Of a stretch of DNA of 64,000 nt, positions 39,645-45,974 are shown one piece after another. The translations under genes and the position numbers were made by a program. Positions within the stretch are counted from its first letter, which is position 1. Every line of letters begins with the position of its first letter. Location: contig ADNK01002379.1 in NCBI GenBank assembly GCA_000320545.1, positions 62,001 through 126,000 of the forward strand. The letters are read 5' to 3'. Source of the DNA: Bigelowiella natans CCMP2755 (taxonomy: Eukaryota; Protista; Cercozoa). Below the pieces are notes generated by a model. The model had not been told where the DNA came from. It did not search any database and saw only the letters and a list, made by a program, of their open reading frames with translations.

Positions 39645-40016
39645 ATGTCAGCAGATGTAATTGGAAAATCCGGTGGCTTGCTGGTGACGTTCTCGGACCG
39701 CAAAACACCGCTTAGGATGACAAAAGCCTCAATCAAAGTGTTTGTGAACGGAATGCACATCGAGGTAGCAAATAGTTGCTGAAGGAGGGGGAGTGGGTTG
39801 ACGATTGTTTTATCGAGAATGTTGATAAGTAATATTTGCATGTTCGACGCTTCCCAAAGGTTCGCCAACGCTTGACGTTCTTCAATCCACACAATAAAGC
39901 TCTCGAGGGAGAGCTTGTGCTGCCCCTTCCAGAACGAGCCACCATTTGCCGCTTCGGTGCGTGCGTGTGTGTGCACATAGTACATTTGCCTTTTCGTCAC
40001 AGTAATGTTGGTCCAA

Positions 40017-40067
<51 letters not shown>

Positions 40068-40069
40068 TC

Positions 40070-40123
<54 letters not shown>

Positions 40124-42725
40124 CAACCCTTGCCCCCCTTCATTAGGCAAGATAGACCCGGAAACCAATAAGACAAACTGGGCGACTGTCGTCACAAAGG
40201 AAAAGGCTCGAGTCGTATTTGAGACAGAGGTGCGGACCGGCAAGAAGGCGGCCATGGTGGAGAAGATAGAATCTGCTGGGAACCTCTATAAGACACGTAT
40301 TTACCCCATCCCCCCCCAATGTGAGCTCACAGTGGAACTCTGGCACTTCGACTCCCTCGACTACGGGCAAGTGGCATCCTCCTCCATCAGTAGTTCCAAA
40401 GCGGAAGACAACGGATATTGCTCATTATCGAGGAGAAGGAGGCCTAATGGCACCGCCGTCGCCGCTGCTGCTACTGCTGCTACTGCTGCTGCTACTACTA
40501 CTACTACTACCACTACCACTATGGCATCATGGTTTAACCTCCCTGACTCACTCGTCGGCCACATAGCTTGCTTTCTCGGACCTAAGAGTATCTCCCGCTT
40601 ATCTTGCGTGAACAAGCGTGTGCTGAAGGTAATGAGCCCGGCACTTATCAGGCTCCCGCTCTATTGTGCTGGGCTCGCGCAATCGGTGGAAGTGACCGTC
40701 ATTGCGGGATCGGTGGGGGGGATCGGGGACGAAGAGATCTATGCCTTGAAAGCGGGGTCTGCTTCGACGTCGTGTCTTCCGCTCATTAGGTCAGATGATG
40801 CGAAGAAACAGCTGTTCTGCTCAGTCAAAAAGCCGGGCGCGGCCGCATGTATCGGCGTGGCCGTCCCGTTTTTAGTGGGAAACCAAGCATTAGTCAATGT
40901 GCAGCGCCTCGAACAAAGTGACAGCGACGATGACAGCGAAGCAGTAGCAGCAGTTGCAAAAGCAGCAACCGAGGGAAAAGTGGCGCCGGAGACAATGACG
41001 GCTGCCGTGAATGGAAACAAGAGAGGGCACAACAGAGAACTGGAAATGGTGGTGGATGATAATGACGAGGATCAAAAAAAGGGATTGGGGCGAGGAGAAG
41101 AAGAAGAAGAAGAAGATGATGATGATGATGATGAGCGAGAGGAAGAAGAGACCTACTTCTCCATCCTGGACCGCCCCCTTTCCGTACACTACGCTCCGGA
41201 AAGAAGCAGCAGCAGCAATAGCAGCATCGGGATTATCTGGGACACGTCTTTAAGCCGCGACATAGATTCTGAGTCAGAAAAGGCGCTTCTGCTCGAACGC
41301 AGGGTCCTCGAAGCATTTCTCCTTAAAAACACTAGTAGCAGCACCAAAATGTCGCTCTACTCGTTCTCAACGGCCGTCACGCCTTGCGAGGGCGTGCAGG
41401 GCGTCGATACGAAGACTCTACTTCAGGCCGTGGATGCACTTAGGTATAGAGGAGCAACGAAAATGGAGGCGCTGGCCACGGTGCTGATGAACGAAGAGAC
41501 CAATGGCGATTGCGACGGCAGGGCCGAGATGTCTGCTACCACTACTACCACCACCACAACGACGATGGCTACTGACCACGACTTTTGGGTGATATTTACG
41601 GACGGCGTGGACACGCTCGAACTGCTGCCCGACGCTATGGCGCCAACGGCTACAGCAGATCCAACGCCTGCAAAGCCCTGCTACATCCTCACCGCCTCGA
41701 GCACGGCCGACCGCGCCTACCTTCGCGCTCTAGCGCTCCGCTCAGGTGGGCGGTTCTTTGATCTCCTGAAGGCAAGGGAGGTGGCAAGGGCCCCGCAACT
41801 GATAGGCCAGGCTTGGTTTGGCTTCCTCGGTGCAGCGTACGACGCGCGGCAAATCTCGAGCCTACACCCCAGCGGTGCACGGCCTATGGCCCTTAACGAG
41901 AGGCTCGCCGTAACTGGCAAGCTTGCCAGTGGCACCAAGGCGACCAGCGTTGTCCTTCATTACGGGGTATACGGATTAGAACCAGTTCTAAGCCGCAGGA
42001 TCACCATAGTTGCATCCTCTCCCTCCTCAGAAAGGAGAAGAAGAGGAGGGGCGAGGGGGGGGAGAGGCACTAATGTGGCAAGAGCCTGGGCTGCAGATGA
42101 GGTGCGGCGCATCGAGGGGGGAGGGGCGCTACCGGAGCGATACGCGAAGATGGGCGTGGAGAAGGGGAAAAAGAGGATCTTCATCGACCTCGGCCGCAAG
42201 TTTAAAATCGTGACCCCAGGGACTTCAATGATTATGCTAGAGAAGCTCTCACAATTCATACAACATGATGTCACACCTCCCACATCCTCGGCATTCTACA
42301 AGGAGTTCATACAGAAGCAGAGGGCGGGGACTGAGGCTGAGGAGGCACAGGTACACTTTCTCATGGGATGACCCCTGTCGTTGTTGCTGCCTTTTTCAAA
42401 TTTTCGCAGCTCTGTCCTCCATCTTCCGTCGACAACTCTCCATATAAGTTATAGTAGACCTCATCACTTGGCAGTATTAGGGGGGTGCGTGGGATGACTG
42501 AATGATGACAACTACGAAGCATGATAAAGATGATGTGATGACGGCGATGATGGTGGTGGCGGTGATGATGATGATTCATCGTAACAAGGAGGATCAGGAT
42601 GGCCTCACATGTTTTGTGTTGTTTTCTCGTTTCTATACCTCTAAGGTCAACGATGATGATTACTATACCAATATCAATTGCTGATATGATACTTTCCCCT
42701 CTCTTTCTTTCTTGGTTTCCTTCTG

Positions 42726-42772
<47 letters not shown>

Positions 42773-44615
42773 TCCCCCCCCCCCTCCATCCCCCCACCCC
42801 CCATATTCCTTCTCCTTCTCTGTCTCTGGTCCTCAAAGGTCATCGGCAAGCTTGCACAGGTACGAGTATGGTGGCGCGATCGTGTCGCTTGGTGGGAGAG
42901 AGACTTCCTGGAGGAGCAGAAGAGACCGTACAAGCGCGTAAAGCGAGGTTAATCCTTCTTCACTCCCTTGATTCGCCAAGGCAGATAACGACTGAGCACA
43001 ATGGTTTTATAATACATTTATAGGTGGGTTTGGCTTCGGTGTAGGGTCTGCTAGGTCCTCGGGGTTTGGTGGAGGAAGTGGAGGTGGATTTGGTGGAGGA
43101 GGAGGAGGTGGATTTGGTGGAGGAAGTGGAGGTGGATTTGGCGGAGGAAGTGGAGGAGGAGGAGGTGCATTTGGCGGTGGAAGTGGAGGTGGATTTGGTG
43201 GAGGAGGAGGAGGAGGAGGAGGAGGCGGATTTGGCGGAGGAAGTGGAGGTAACTCAAACTTTGGTGGAGGAGCTGTTAGATCCTCGGGGTTTGGCGGAGG
43301 AGGTAACTCCAACTTTTAAGTGGTTTCGACCGAACATATATTGAATGAACATAATGTTTATGATACTACATATAACAGCTCCTTCCTACGCTCCTACGTC
43401 TCCTGCCTACGCTCCTATGTCTCTTTCATACGCTCCTACTTCTCCTTCATACACCCCTACTTCTCCTTCATACACCCCTACTTCTCCTTCATACACCCCT
43501 ACTTCTCCTTCATACACCCCTACTTCTCCTTCATACGGTCCCACGGCTCCTTCATACAGCGCCACGTCTCCTTCCTACAGCCCAACGTCTCCCTCTTACA
43601 CACCGCATTCATCGAGCAACAACAATAGCGTCGGTTCTGGGGACAACGTAATCAAGCTTTCCTCTTACACCGTAAAAAACGCAAACGCCTCCGTGCTGCT
43701 GATGCGAAATGCCCTCGAAAAGGGAGGACTTGCTGAGGCAATGGGCGCTTTTGACTGCGAGCGGAGGAAAGATGGTTTCAAGGCGAGTGCCGCGCCCAGC
43801 TTCTACTTCGCCTGTGCTTCCTTCCTCTTCGAGCAGGCGCGCGGAGTGGGGGTGAAAAGCGGTGTGGCAATGGATGAGGAGAAAGAGGAGGTTAAGAAGG
43901 GTGGTGCGAACCGGAGGCGAGCAACTCCACCGAATGGCTCTGTCCCCGCCCCCCTGCTCCAAAAGGCGGCGTTACAGGTAATTCTCTCTCCGTTAGAACT
44001 GGGACTAGAAGACCCCGTCCTGCTGCGTCTAGTGGCATACCGCCTCCAGATTGAGTCGGAACAAGCGAAGAACGGCAGCTGCAGCAGCAACACCTCGAAA
44101 AGCGACTGCTACGATAGCGGAGAAATGGCTACGGTCATAGCACAGGTGGCGTTAAGTCTTTTCGAGCGCATCAAAGTTCTGAGGCCAGAAGAGCCTCAGT
44201 CGTATCGAGACTTGGCGCTATGCTTGTCCGACAAGGCCTTGCGGATGGCCAATAAAGCTGCGGCTAATGAAGGCGACAAAGACAGCGACGGTGATAGCTG
44301 CGAGCGCAAAGAGGTGCGCCGCATCGTTGCGAGGGCTCTAAGTCTCTTCGCGCGTGTGGTTACGGGTAAATGGGATAAACGCTTCATAGAGATCGAAGTC
44401 ACAACGCTGATGGAGTTGAACGCCTTTGTTCATAGAATGCGCACGTTGCATCCCTGGATTGAGAAGGGGGTGCGAGGCGGCGGGCCCAACGGAGAGAGGA
44501 CGGCTAATATTTTTGCCTTGGATCAACGAACGGATATCCGCGAGAAAATCCCCAAGGAATTCCTTCGGAACTTGCCGTGTGATTTACGTGTCTCCCTTGG
44601 GTGCGAAAAGCGATT

Positions 44616-44648
<33 letters not shown>

Positions 44649-44894
44649 GCGCCTTGCATACTGGTATATACCGGCCTAGGAGAATAATCGAGAGTTCTTT
44701 CTCCCTCTCCCCCTCTCTTTTCCTCTTCATCATCATCATCGGCATCATCAGCAGCAGCATCATTATCCATTATTCACACGCGACCATTCAGTTCTGCTGT
44801 GTTCTAATTATTCGTCATGAAATGATTCTCCTCTCCCTTTGCTATCCTGTCTTCTCGCAAATGACACACGCACACACACACGCACCATTAGATG

Positions 44895-44929
<35 letters not shown>

Positions 44930-45551
44930 CACATATATGCTAATTTATAAATGATTTCAGCTGGGACACAGATATGACCGACATTGACCTGCATGTCATA
45001 GAGCCAAGCGGCGAAGAAGCTTATTATTCCAACAGGAGAACTCACATCGGCGGCCAAGTTTCAAGAGATTTTGTTTCAGGTGAAAAAGAGAGCAACAAAG
45101 AGCTGCTTTCTTAGAGTCTGAATATTTTTCGAATACACAAGACGACAATGATGATTGCAATGATGATTATGGTGACAATAACTGCGATGGTGATGATGAT
45201 GATGATGACGGCAGCATTGAGACAGGGTAGGCACACTCATATAACGGATATTTGGCAATCGTAAGCCATAATGTCCAATCGACGAAAATAATAATCCACG
45301 TTCACACCCTCTTTTCTATCTGCCTCCTTGGGAGGGATTCTATGTGCGAAGTTGACAGGGTTTAATATTTTCTTTTCCATTCCTCTTTTTTCAAAAGGAT
45401 ATGGGCCCGAGGAGTATATGATCAAGAGTGCGATTGGAGGAAAGTACCTGATAAAGGTTACTGCTGCCTGCATAGCTTGTTGTTATGTCTGCAATTTTGG
45501 AACCCTCCCCTCCCCTTCACCTCCCGAGAGTTTTCTGCTTGTGCTGCTGCT

Positions 45552-45588
<37 letters not shown>

Positions 45589-45974
45589 CTCGCTCTCTCT
45601 ACTTGTCCCCGCACCGTTTTCGACGATATTGTCTTTTACCTAAATCGAATCTTCTGATGTACTGAGTTGGGTGATTTGAATGTGGCTGCTGGGCGTTGTT
45701 ATCGTCGATCCATCATACATCTTCCTTACCGCCATCCAGCATACACATCGTTAAAAAACGTCCACGAAGTGATGAACTCATACATTTTAAGGCCAAGTAC
45801 TTCTCGTCCCATCGCCAGGATTTCTCTGGAGCAACAACAATTCTACTTCGGCTGACCACCAACTTTGGGCGTTCGAGCGAGAAGAGTCAGGCCATTGCGT
45901 TGCGTCTCGACACGAACAAAGAGATGGTCAAAGTTGGAGAAATCAAGATGCCGACCTTGCCGTGGCAGCAGTAG
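39645..45974 (+). CDS. VIT + vWA-like + TPR-like + DUF2135/YfaP-type protein with F-box-like, Gly/Phe-rich and YxPTSPS-heptad insertions
   Basis: VIT: [56 protein letters not shown]. vWA-like: [47 protein letters not shown]2135-like: DLRVSL|[33 protein letters not shown]|GYGPEEY. Stop at 45972-45974. Confidence 0.88.
43387..43617 (+). repeat. 21-bp coding tandem repeat encoding 11 CTD-like heptads
   Basis: [21 protein letters not shown] (YTPTSPS)x4 [28 protein letters not shown], in frame with ORF 43345-44619. Confidence 0.95.

What the first reader, a model, noticed from the sequence alone, without database searches (positions are those of the whole stretch)
43387..43617. RNA Pol II CTD-like heptad array inside a VIT/DUF2135 protein
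Seen: 11 in-register Y-x-P-T-S-P-S heptads (one perfect YSPTSPS; position 2 mostly T/A) in the same open exon as the TPR-like/DUF2135 region, with synonymous divergence among outer units and no RPB1 domains nearby. Established: YSPTSPS repeats are the RPB1 CTD platform for CDK7/CDK9, capping enzyme, Pin1 and CTD phosphatases. Inference: a CTD mimic or decoy retaining Ser5-Pro6/Ser7, or a captured RPB1 fragment, on a scaffold architecture otherwise typical of bacteria.
Basis: partly seen in the sequence, partly recalled or inferred. Interest (0 to 1): 0.8.

Follow-up and report, generated by a model that had tools for sequence, protein, structure and literature searches.

The report
CTD-like heptad linker in VIT/DUF2135 gene
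A nuclear gene of the alga Bigelowiella natans carries eleven real, coding repeats that look like the tail of RNA polymerase II, but they grew in place inside a floppy, fast-changing linker and were not copied from the polymerase gene; whether the cell's polymerase-tail enzymes act on them is untested.

Summary
Window 43387-43617 (+) encodes 11 in-register heptads. Seven of them keep Tyr1, Pro3, Ser5 and Pro6, and one is a perfect YSPTSPS. The window is Bigelowiella natans nuclear DNA.

The array opens an exon that runs on into the TPR-like region. A 76-nt GT..AG phase-1 intron joins it to a Gly/Phe-repeat exon. JGI models 141423 and 141424 are one gene: VIT, F-box-like, vWA-like, disordered linker, TPR-like, DUF2135.

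Capture from RPB1 is not supported. The organism's RPB1 has 27 in-register heptads, but its codons differ throughout, and the best unit match is 16 of 21 bases. A same-genome paralogue, three closer eukaryote-like relatives and about 115 mostly bacterial members lack heptads at this site. There the linker is hypervariable (101-266 aa).

The four central units are base-identical, which points to recent slippage. The outer units differ mostly at synonymous sites (P about 5e-5 naive, 0.03 conservative). This shows the frame is translated and the motif is constrained.

Best reading: a disordered Tyr/Ser/Thr-Pro spacer that evolved in place and is likely phosphorylated. A true CTD mimic remains possible but untested. 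No transcript data were available.

The parts
39645..39767 (+). Exon 1: start codon ([11 protein letters not shown]...) and start of the VIT domain. No signal-peptide-like N-terminus. Ends approximate to 2 nt.
   Evidence: JGI model P0001 mapped to the window. Collinear tblastn match to P0002 residues 19-52.
39863..39958 (+). Exon 2: middle of the VIT domain.
   Evidence: Pfam VIT E=3e-5 on this piece. Mapping. tblastn 74% identity to P0002.
40149..42350 (+). Exon 3: end of VIT, the F-box-like motif (about 40530-40622), and a vWA-like region with a D-x-S-x-S motif. The proposed donor lies after 42350 (CAG|GTACAC).
   Evidence: Pfam VIT 31.7 bits and F-box 20.3 bits against a cut-off of 20.5. 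tblastn to P0002 83-653. The donor and phase are my reading of the sequence.
42842..42949 (+). Exon 4: conserved W-W-x-x-D-F helix followed by a basic patch ([10 protein letters not shown]).
   Evidence: Present in JGI model P0007. Homologous to the paralogue L055 and to P0002. AF2 helix with pLDDT about 90.
43026..43302 (+). Exon 5: Gly/Phe repeat ([10 protein letters not shown]-type, about 92 aa), predicted disordered.
   Evidence: TRF periods 24/48/57. P0007 mapping. pLDDT below 50.
43303..43378 (+). 76-nt intron, GAG|GTAACT ... ATAACAG|CT, phase 1, 30% G+C.
   Evidence: Frame and phase arithmetic and splice contexts. G+C is 0.30 against 0.53-0.585 in the flanking exons. The same junction is used in JGI model P0007.
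43387..43617 (+). The finding: 11 in-register Y-x-P-T-S-P-S-type heptads, the first part of exon 6 (the exon starts at 43379).
43618..44596 (+). Rest of exon 6: a short Ser/Asn tail, then the all-helical TPR-like domain and the first residues of the DUF2135-associated C-terminal module (…DLRVSLG). The 3' end is approximate.
   Evidence: Same open frame. tblastn 44% identity to P0002 789-1041. AF2 helices at pLDDT 80-97. Only weak TPR-type fold matches.
44938..45081 (+). Exon 7 (approximate): W-D-x-D-x-T-D-x-D-L-H-V...GG..SRDF block.
   Evidence: tblastn 67% identity to P0002 1032-1079.
45388..45456 (+). Exon 8 (approximate): GYGPEEY block.
   Evidence: tblastn 70% identity to P0002 1076-1098.
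45783..45974 (+). Last exon (approximate start): Pfam DUF2135 and the stop codon.
   Evidence: PF09906 33.1 bits at G000:C1358:107789-107908, which is window 45789-45908. tblastn. Stop seen.

Best explanation
The heptads are a translated coding minisatellite. It arose in place by tandem duplication of a 21-base unit, inside the hypervariable disordered linker of a eukaryotic VIT / F-box-like / vWA-like / TPR-like / DUF2135 protein of Bigelowiella natans. It is not a copied piece of RPB1. Together with the Gly/Phe repeat just upstream it forms a structure-less spacer of about 185 residues. Aromatic residues (Phe, then Tyr) are spaced regularly along it, and each heptad offers two proline-directed phospho-acceptor sites: Thr/Ser2-Pro3 and Ser5-Pro6. 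Selection has kept the motif, above all Tyr1, Pro3, Ser5 and Pro6.

Inferred, not shown: the spacer is phosphorylated by proline-directed kinases, which in this cell include the CTD kinases. Phosphorylation would tune the reach, charge or self-association of the linker between the N-terminal and C-terminal modules of an intracellular protein.
For: Shown:
- The array is real and in frame with a homology-supported domain.
- The GT..AG 76-nt phase-1 intron links it to the Gly/Phe exon, and exon/intron G+C contrast fits.
- Only one phase-compatible alternative acceptor lies downstream. It sits inside the ALEKGG|LAEAMG segment that aligns with relatives and follows a purine-rich stretch.
- Four central units are base-identical and the edges are decayed.
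- The 38 base differences of outer units give only 13 residue changes, where simulation expects 22 +/- 2.2 (P about 5e-5). Counting distinct codon variants only gives 9 synonymous to 7 non-synonymous at core positions (binomial P = 0.03).
- Codon use differs from RPB1: Tyr TAC 11/11 here against TAT 22/27; Pro6 CCT 8/11 against CCA 21/27; Ser7 TCN 9/11 against AGY 23/27; best unit match 16/21.
- The paralogue on contig C1499 has acidic and poly-Gln sequence at this site.
- P0002, P0023 and P0024 have no heptads. In the 119 of 141 retrieved proteins where both anchors could be located, the segment between them is 101-266 aa with varied composition. Across all 141 retrieved proteins only this gene's own model has heptads.
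- AF2 gives pLDDT below 50 and no secondary structure for nearly all of residues 86-269 of P0007, between confident helices.
- The N-terminus is not signal-peptide-like here, in the paralogue or in the complete transcript P0002.
- CID-domain genes and a canonical RPB1 CTD exist in the genome.
Against: - There are no transcript or peptide data.
- Six of seven positions match the CTD consensus, which is unlikely for an arbitrary amplified heptad.
- A second gene, the kinase-like gene on C2855, also carries Y-x-P-S/T-S/T-P-x units. That hints at shared selection or a shared source rather than accident.
- The order 'Gly-rich, then YTP units, then YSP units' resembles the RPB1 linker-CTD junction, so an old capture cannot be excluded.
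- The selection test uses few, non-independent units.
Confidence: 0.55

Rival explanations
1. Working CTD mimic or decoy. The array is written and read by the Pol II CTD machinery (CDK7/9-type kinases, Ssu72/Fcp1-type phosphatases, Pin1-type isomerase, CID or capping-enzyme readers). This would bring an F-box-like protein to transcription sites or soak up those factors.
For: - Seven units keep all four letters that are essential in fission yeast (Tyr1, Pro3, Ser5, Pro6; PMC4574753), and variation is concentrated at the non-essential position 2.
- Six consecutive units are intact apart from position 2.
- There are signs of purifying selection.
- The protein lacks a signal peptide and has a basic patch and an F-box-like motif, so it is probably cytosolic or nuclear.
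- The strict double-heptad pattern is otherwise exclusive to RPB1 in this genome.
- RPB1's own proximal units here are YTPASPS, so Thr2 is native to this organism's CTD.
Against: - Nothing here shows binding, phosphorylation or nuclear location.
- Ser2 is present in only 2 of 11 units.
- Four of 11 units are broken at Pro3, Ser5 or Pro6, against none in 27 RPB1 units.
- Paralogue and relatives do without the array, so it is not part of the family's core function.
- CTD mimics found in my literature search are single short motifs, not arrays (PMC4186968 and PMC7110113, titles and abstracts only).
Confidence: 0.2
2. Neutral low-complexity expansion: a slippage-prone CT-rich 21-mer that happens to encode Ser/Pro/Thr/Tyr, tolerated in a linker where any flexible sequence will do.
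For: - The linker is hypervariable across the family.
- Four identical central units show ongoing slippage.
- The genome is rich in microsatellites.
- Four edge units are degenerate at core positions.
- The scan covers very many windows, so one look-alike by chance is not surprising.
Against: - There is an excess of synonymous change among outer units.
- Unit 10 differs from the core unit in 5 of 7 codons yet changes only position 2, and that change produces the perfect consensus.
- Tyr1 is invariant in 11/11 units.
Confidence: 0.15
3. Captured piece of the RPB1 gene (its linker-CTD junction), later diverged and re-amplified.
For: The best BLASTP alignment is to the proximal YTP-type CTD units, preceded by Gly-rich sequence in both proteins (51% over 70 aa). 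The motif match itself also fits.
Against: - Codon families differ, and identity is no higher than the shared amino acids impose.
- An intron separates the Gly-rich part from the heptads here, while RPB1 has one open frame across that junction.
- No RPB1-specific flank is shared.
- The paralogue and relatives lack any trace of it.
Confidence: 0.05
4. Not part of a made protein: pseudogene, mis-assembly, or a segment removed by splicing.
For: The only gene model for this exon is ab initio (Augustus). JGI split the locus in two models. No transcript was seen.
Against: - Every homology-supported exon is open and collinear with a complete transcript-derived relative.
- There are no Ns.
- Splice sites are canonical and their phases fit.
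- Third-position-biased divergence indicates translation in this frame.
- No good in-frame alternative acceptor exists.
Confidence: 0.05

Closest known systems
RNA polymerase II RPB1 C-terminal domain (Pfam PF05001 repeats)
   Same: Tandem heptads in strict register. Tyr1 is invariant, and Pro3, Thr4, Ser5, Pro6 and Ser7 are kept in most units. Units vary at synonymous sites. The segment is predicted disordered. It passes the Pfam repeat model's cut-off.
   Different: It is not at the end of an RPB1 core but internal to an unrelated protein. It has 11 units against 27 or more. Ser2 is replaced by Thr, Ala or Gly in 9 units, and 4 units are broken at core positions. Codon use differs, so descent from this organism's RPB1 is not supported.
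Short CTD mimics and CTD-like regions of transcription factors (Trf4 and Sen1 Nrd1-interacting motifs; Spt5 C-terminal repeats)
   Same: These are non-polymerase proteins with sequence that CTD readers or kinases can use. My source is the titles and abstracts of PMC4186968, PMC7110113 and PMC4066402 plus general knowledge.
   Different: Those are single short motifs, or repeats with a consensus of their own, in proteins with known roles in transcription. Here there is a near-consensus heptad array in a protein with no known link to transcription, and no binding data.
VIT-vWA-TPR-DUF2135 proteins of bacteria (e.g. Planctomycetota, Verrucomicrobiota, Myxococcota) and their few eukaryotic relatives
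   Same: The host protein is collinear with them from VIT to DUF2135. The same two anchor motifs flank a variable linker.
   Different: The B. natans genes have spliceosomal introns and an F-box-like insert. This copy's linker is among the longest seen (249 aa between the anchors). It is the only one with Gly/Phe repeats plus CTD-like heptads.
Low-complexity 'sticker and spacer' regions with regularly spaced aromatic residues (FUS/EWS/TAF15-type Tyr-rich regions; Gly/Phe-rich tails)
   Same: Regularly spaced Phe and Tyr sit in a Gly/Ser or Pro/Ser/Thr background, and the region is predicted disordered. This is a comparison by composition, from general knowledge.
   Different: There is no sequence relationship, no RNA-binding domain, and self-association is untested.

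Membership tests
RNA Pol II CTD repeat (PF05001) | Tandem heptads matching the YSPTSPS consensus | tested here: met
   25.6 bits against a cut-off of 20.3. 11 in-register units, one perfect, 7 with Y-x-P-T-S-P-[S/A].
RNA Pol II CTD repeat (PF05001) | Lies at the C-terminus of an RPB1 core (Rpb1 domains 1-7) | tested here: not met
   Rpb1 domain 1 matches only contigs C3231, C257, C1238 and C1606. The array here is flanked by VIT/vWA-like and TPR-like/DUF2135 regions.
RNA Pol II CTD repeat (PF05001) | Ser at position 2 in most units | tested here: not met
   Position 2 is Ser in 2 of 11 units, Thr in 5, Ala in 3, Gly in 1. RPB1 of the same genome has Ser2 in 23 of 27.
RNA Pol II CTD repeat (PF05001) | Letters essential in fission yeast (Tyr1, Pro3, Ser5, Pro6) kept together in a unit | tested here: met
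   All four are present in 7 of 11 units. Tyr1 11/11, Pro3 10/11, Ser5 10/11, Pro6 9/11. The criterion is from PMC4574753.
RNA Pol II CTD repeat (PF05001) | Phosphorylated by CTD kinases and bound by CTD readers | not testable with these tools
   Needs kinase, binding or phosphoproteomic assays.
Descent from this organism's RPB1 gene (captured fragment) | Base-level identity above what the shared amino acids impose, or shared flanks | tested here: not met
   Best unit match is 16/21. Codon families differ at positions 1, 4, 6 and 7. Flank similarity is low-complexity only.
VIT-vWA-TPR-DUF2135 protein family | VIT domain at the N-terminus | tested here: met
   PF08487 31.6-31.7 bits on exon 3 (cut-off 26.5) and 24.6 bits on exon 2.
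VIT-vWA-TPR-DUF2135 protein family | DUF2135 (PF09906) at the C-terminus | tested here: met
   33.1 bits against a cut-off of 22 at window 45789-45908.
VIT-vWA-TPR-DUF2135 protein family | Collinear similarity over the whole length to full-length members | tested here: met
   Eight collinear tblastn segments to P0002 residues 19-1152, interrupted only at its linker.
F-box proteins (SCF substrate receptors) | F-box motif passing the family threshold | tested here: inconclusive
   PF00646 20.3-20.4 bits against a cut-off of 20.5. The same place matches in P0002 at E=0.0029. Skp1 binding is untested.
Coding minisatellite in a disordered linker | Head-to-tail units with identical central copies, predicted disorder, and non-conservation of the segment in homologues | tested here: met
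   four identical units; pLDDT below 50; homologues differ.

The most novel reading that the evidence does not exclude
A selectively kept 'CTD in trans'. An F-box-like, probably nuclear or cytosolic protein carries a working stretch of Pol II-tail code. The cell's CTD kinases, phosphatases and readers act on this stretch. It would couple an SCF-type ubiquitin ligase (or whatever the VIT/vWA/DUF2135 module binds) to the transcription cycle, or buffer CTD-modifying enzymes. Bigelowiella also runs a second Pol II in its nucleomorph whose Rpb1 has no heptads (PMC4822330). A detached CTD-like module would be of special interest there, but the lack of any targeting peptide argues against delivery to that compartment.
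Probability: 0.12. Interest if true: 0.8.

Novelty: new variant of a known kind. Interest (0 to 1): 0.4.

Why it matters
If the array is only a linker, it is a clean example of tandem slippage in a disordered segment reaching a famous motif independently. It also warns against reading function from repeat look-alikes.

If CTD enzymes do act on it, it would be a natural non-polymerase substrate carrying near-consensus heptads. That would give a handle for asking what the heptad alone, away from Pol II, is enough to recruit.

The work also corrects the annotation. JGI models 141423 and 141424 are one gene, with three further 3' exons.

Tried and rejected
- A genome-wide search with the Pfam repeat model PF05001 found nothing, even in RPB1. 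The 14-position model is too short for that tool, so I used patterns and a protein query instead.
The 30 best zinc-finger loci (about 1.5 kb either side) held no heptad run. It was not located and is neither confirmed nor refuted.
- A JGI metagenome scan for close relatives and one for the exact double unit found nothing.
- An ESM Atlas search with the heptad part, leaving out RPB1 families, gave no usable hit.
- Foldseek of the model against the PDB gave only weak generic TPR matches, E >= 5e-3.
- I did not run the large representative search. Its 50% clustering would hide the close orthologues that matter, and the word searches had already placed the family.
I searched exon by exon and used JGI's own model P0007. 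That model has a doubtful first exon (residues 1-49) and reads into the intron at its 3' end.
- Nucleomorph targeting was considered and set aside. The N-termini here, in the paralogue and in P0002 have no signal-peptide-like start.

Full report
**What is there.** On the + strand, 43387-43617 reads as eleven 21-base units in one register: [21 protein letters not shown], four base-identical [35 protein letters not shown]. Tandem Repeats Finder gives period 21, 10.6 copies, 87% matches and no indels. The Pfam model of the Rpb1 C-terminal repeat matches above its cut-off (25.6 against 20.3 bits).

**Whose DNA it is.** The big upstream exon is 100% identical to JGI model Bigna1/141423. The heptad exon is 100% identical to Bigna1/141424. 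The window is therefore Bigelowiella natans nuclear DNA, from a 91-Mb assembly.

**The gene.** The two JGI models are one gene.
- A complete transcript-derived relative, P0002 (1152 aa; VIT, F-box-like, DUF2135), aligns collinearly from 39666 to 45950 in eight segments. The only break is across its own linker.
- My exon reading is 39645-39767, 39863-39958, 40149-42350, 42842-42949, 43026-43302, 43379 to about 44596, then about 44938-45081, 45388-45456 and 45783-45974.
- Pfam finds VIT, an F-box at the threshold (20.3-20.4 against 20.5 bits), and DUF2135 at 45789-45908.
- Introns are GT..AG.
- The intron between the Gly/Phe-repeat exon and the heptad exon is 43303-43378: 76 nt, phase 1, 30% G+C. 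Flanking exons are 53-58% G+C. Joining 43302 to 43379 makes an Ala codon and continues straight into the heptads, exactly as in JGI's ab initio model.
- Only one other phase-compatible AG lies within about 350 nt downstream. It sits inside the ALEKGG|LAEAMG segment that aligns with relatives, behind a purine-rich stretch.
- There are no Ns in the locus.
- I did not build a joined full-length protein. All searches were exon by exon or used database proteins.

**Is it a piece of RPB1?** The organism's RPB1 lies on contig C3231, with a near-identical copy on C255. Its CTD has 27 in-register units: YTPDSPS, three YTPASPS, 22 YSPTSPS, one YSPTSPT, and a few more after a break. Codon choice is systematically different:

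| Position | This array | RPB1 |
|---|---|---|
| Tyr1 | TAC 11/11 | TAT 22/27 |
| Thr4 | ACT/ACG 9/11 | ACC 16/27 |
| Pro6 | CCT 8/11 | CCA 21/27 |
| Ser7 | TCN 9/11 | AGY 23/27 |

- No unit here matches any RPB1 unit at more than 16 of 21 bases, which is what identical amino acids alone give.
- BLASTP aligns the array to the proximal YTP-type units, with Gly-rich sequence before them in both proteins (51% over 70 aa). The similarity is low-complexity and does not extend into anything RPB1-specific.
- RPB1 has one open frame across that junction, while here an intron intervenes.
- A recent capture is therefore not supported. An old one cannot be excluded, but nothing calls for it.

**Where it sits in the family.**
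- A paralogue on contig C1499 has the same architecture and is 50-62% identical in the TPR-like part. At the corresponding place it has an acidic stretch and a poly-Gln run, and no heptads.
- P0002, P0023 and P0024, the closest relatives found, also have none. Nor do any of the mostly bacterial members retrieved.
- Both anchors, the W-W-x-x-D-F helix and the S-F-Y-F-D-C-A block, could be located in 119 of the 141 retrieved proteins. The segment between them is 101-266 aa (median 132) and varies in composition: Ala/Pro-rich in bacteria, acidic/Lys-rich in P0002.
- This gene's segment is 249 aa and is the only one with heptads.
- AlphaFold2 on a 50-sequence alignment gives pLDDT below 50 and no secondary structure for nearly all of residues 86-269 of P0007 (the Gly/Phe repeat, the heptads and a Ser/Asn tail). 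This stretch lies between a confident helix and a confident all-helical domain. The helical domain has only weak, generic TPR-type fold matches.
- The array is thus a lineage-specific filling of a family-wide disordered, hypervariable linker.

**How it evolves.**
- Four central units are identical base for base, the mark of recent slippage or unequal exchange.
- The seven outer units carry 38 base differences from the core unit but only 13 residue differences. Random placement of the same number of changes gives 22 +/- 2.2 (P about 5e-5). At the six positions other than position 2, there are 26 base differences and 7 residue differences against 15.2 +/- 1.9 expected.
- Units share ancestry, so these counts are inflated. 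Counting each distinct codon variant once gives 9 synonymous to 7 non-synonymous at core positions, against about 31% synonymous expected (binomial P = 0.03).
- Unit 10 differs from the core in 5 of 7 codons, yet only position 2 changes, and that change makes the perfect consensus.
- I read this as modest but real evidence that the segment is translated in this frame and that the peptide motif is under constraint.
- The constraint is far weaker than in RPB1. Four of 11 units are broken at Pro3, Ser5 or Pro6, against none of 27.

**How CTD-like it is.**
- In fission yeast, Tyr1, Pro3, Ser5 and Pro6 are the essential letters, while Ser2, Thr4 and Ser7 are dispensable (PMC4574753). Here Tyr1 is kept in 11/11 units, Pro3 in 10/11, Ser5 in 10/11 and Pro6 in 9/11. 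All four occur together in 7 units, and the variation is concentrated at position 2.
- Thr at position 2 also occurs in this organism's own proximal CTD units.
- The genome encodes CID-domain proteins.
- The protein starts without a signal-peptide-like sequence, as do its paralogue and P0002. It also has a basic patch just before the Gly/Phe repeat. An intracellular, possibly nuclear location is plausible but inferred.

**How unusual it is in this genome.** The strict double-unit pattern occurs only in RPB1 (two contigs) and in this gene, and the reversed control gives 0 hits. A looser pattern adds one more gene, on C2855. There, units such as YRPTTPN and YAPSSPA, again with identical central copies, precede a protein-kinase-like domain in one open frame. 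Its codons differ from both other arrays. I could not locate it.

**Literature.** Searches for CTD mimics returned only short single motifs (Trf4, Sen1) and the Spt5 repeats, judged from titles and abstracts. I found no description of near-consensus heptad arrays in non-polymerase proteins, but the search was limited. Nucleomorph-encoded Rpb1 of chlorarachniophytes lacks heptads (PMC4822330; PMC3646058). That makes a detached CTD-like module tempting to speculate about, but the missing targeting peptide argues against it.

**Verdict.**
- My best reading (0.55) is a translated Tyr/Ser/Thr-Pro heptad spacer that evolved in place in a disordered linker. It is under modest constraint and is probably phosphorylated by proline-directed kinases.
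- A genuine functional link to the CTD machinery gets 0.2, a neutral expansion 0.15, an old capture 0.05, and a non-expressed artefact 0.05.
- No transcript evidence could be obtained. Records of this genome appear to be withheld from the look-ups, so that absence carries no weight.

Noticed in passing
window 39645-45974: JGI models Bigna1/141423 (813 aa) and 141424 (590 aa) are two halves of one gene. Model 141424 has a doubtful first exon (42502-42648) and reads into an intron at its end (…LGCEKRL), missing three 3' exons that hold the DUF2135 module.
   Followed up: yes
G000:C2855:32032-32208 (L014:1387-2574): A second non-polymerase gene has CTD-like heptads (YRPTTPN, YRPTTPT, YSPSSPA, YAPSSPA x3, YAPSSPS). 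They lie in one open frame with a protein-kinase-like domain (Pfam Pkinase E=1.5e-8). Its codons differ from both RPB1 and the window array.
   Followed up: partly
G000:C1499:1-9468 (L055): A paralogue of the whole gene (VIT, F-box-like, vWA-like, TPR-like, DUF2135) fills a 9.5-kb contig. Its linker holds a short GGGGGGF, an acidic stretch and a poly-Gln run instead of Gly/Phe repeats and heptads.
   Followed up: yes
window 40530-40622: The F-box-like motif between VIT and the vWA-like region scores at the Pfam threshold. It recurs at the same place in the paralogue and in P0002. P0023 has a similar L-P-D-x-L-I-G segment there by eye, but Pfam reported no F-box for it. No such motif was evident in the two bacterial members read, P0003 and P0004.
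   Followed up: partly
G000:C3231:125800-126450 and G000:C255:126570-127200: RPB1 with its CTD is present on two contigs with near-identical but not identical heptad coding sequence (alleles or an assembly duplicate). The window gene has only one copy.
   Followed up: no
window 43007-43312 (-) and 43320-43628 (+): The long ORFs in other frames or on the other strand of the two repeat arrays (a poly-Pro one opposite the Gly/Phe repeat, an FSFIHPY one over the heptads) are by-products of the repeats, not genes.
   Followed up: partly
window 39960-40150, 42351-42841, 44600-44950: Introns of this gene are packed with (GA)n, (TA)n and trinucleotide microsatellites. The paralogue's introns hold (CA)n and (TA)n at the matching places.
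   Followed up: no
P0024, P0032, P0035 (relatives from metagenome or transcriptome data): Other eukaryote-like members of the family are fused to different extras: CCCH zinc fingers and an SF3b1-like piece in P0024, and ZZ zinc fingers in P0032 and P0035. The family seems to pick up eukaryotic modules repeatedly.
   Followed up: no
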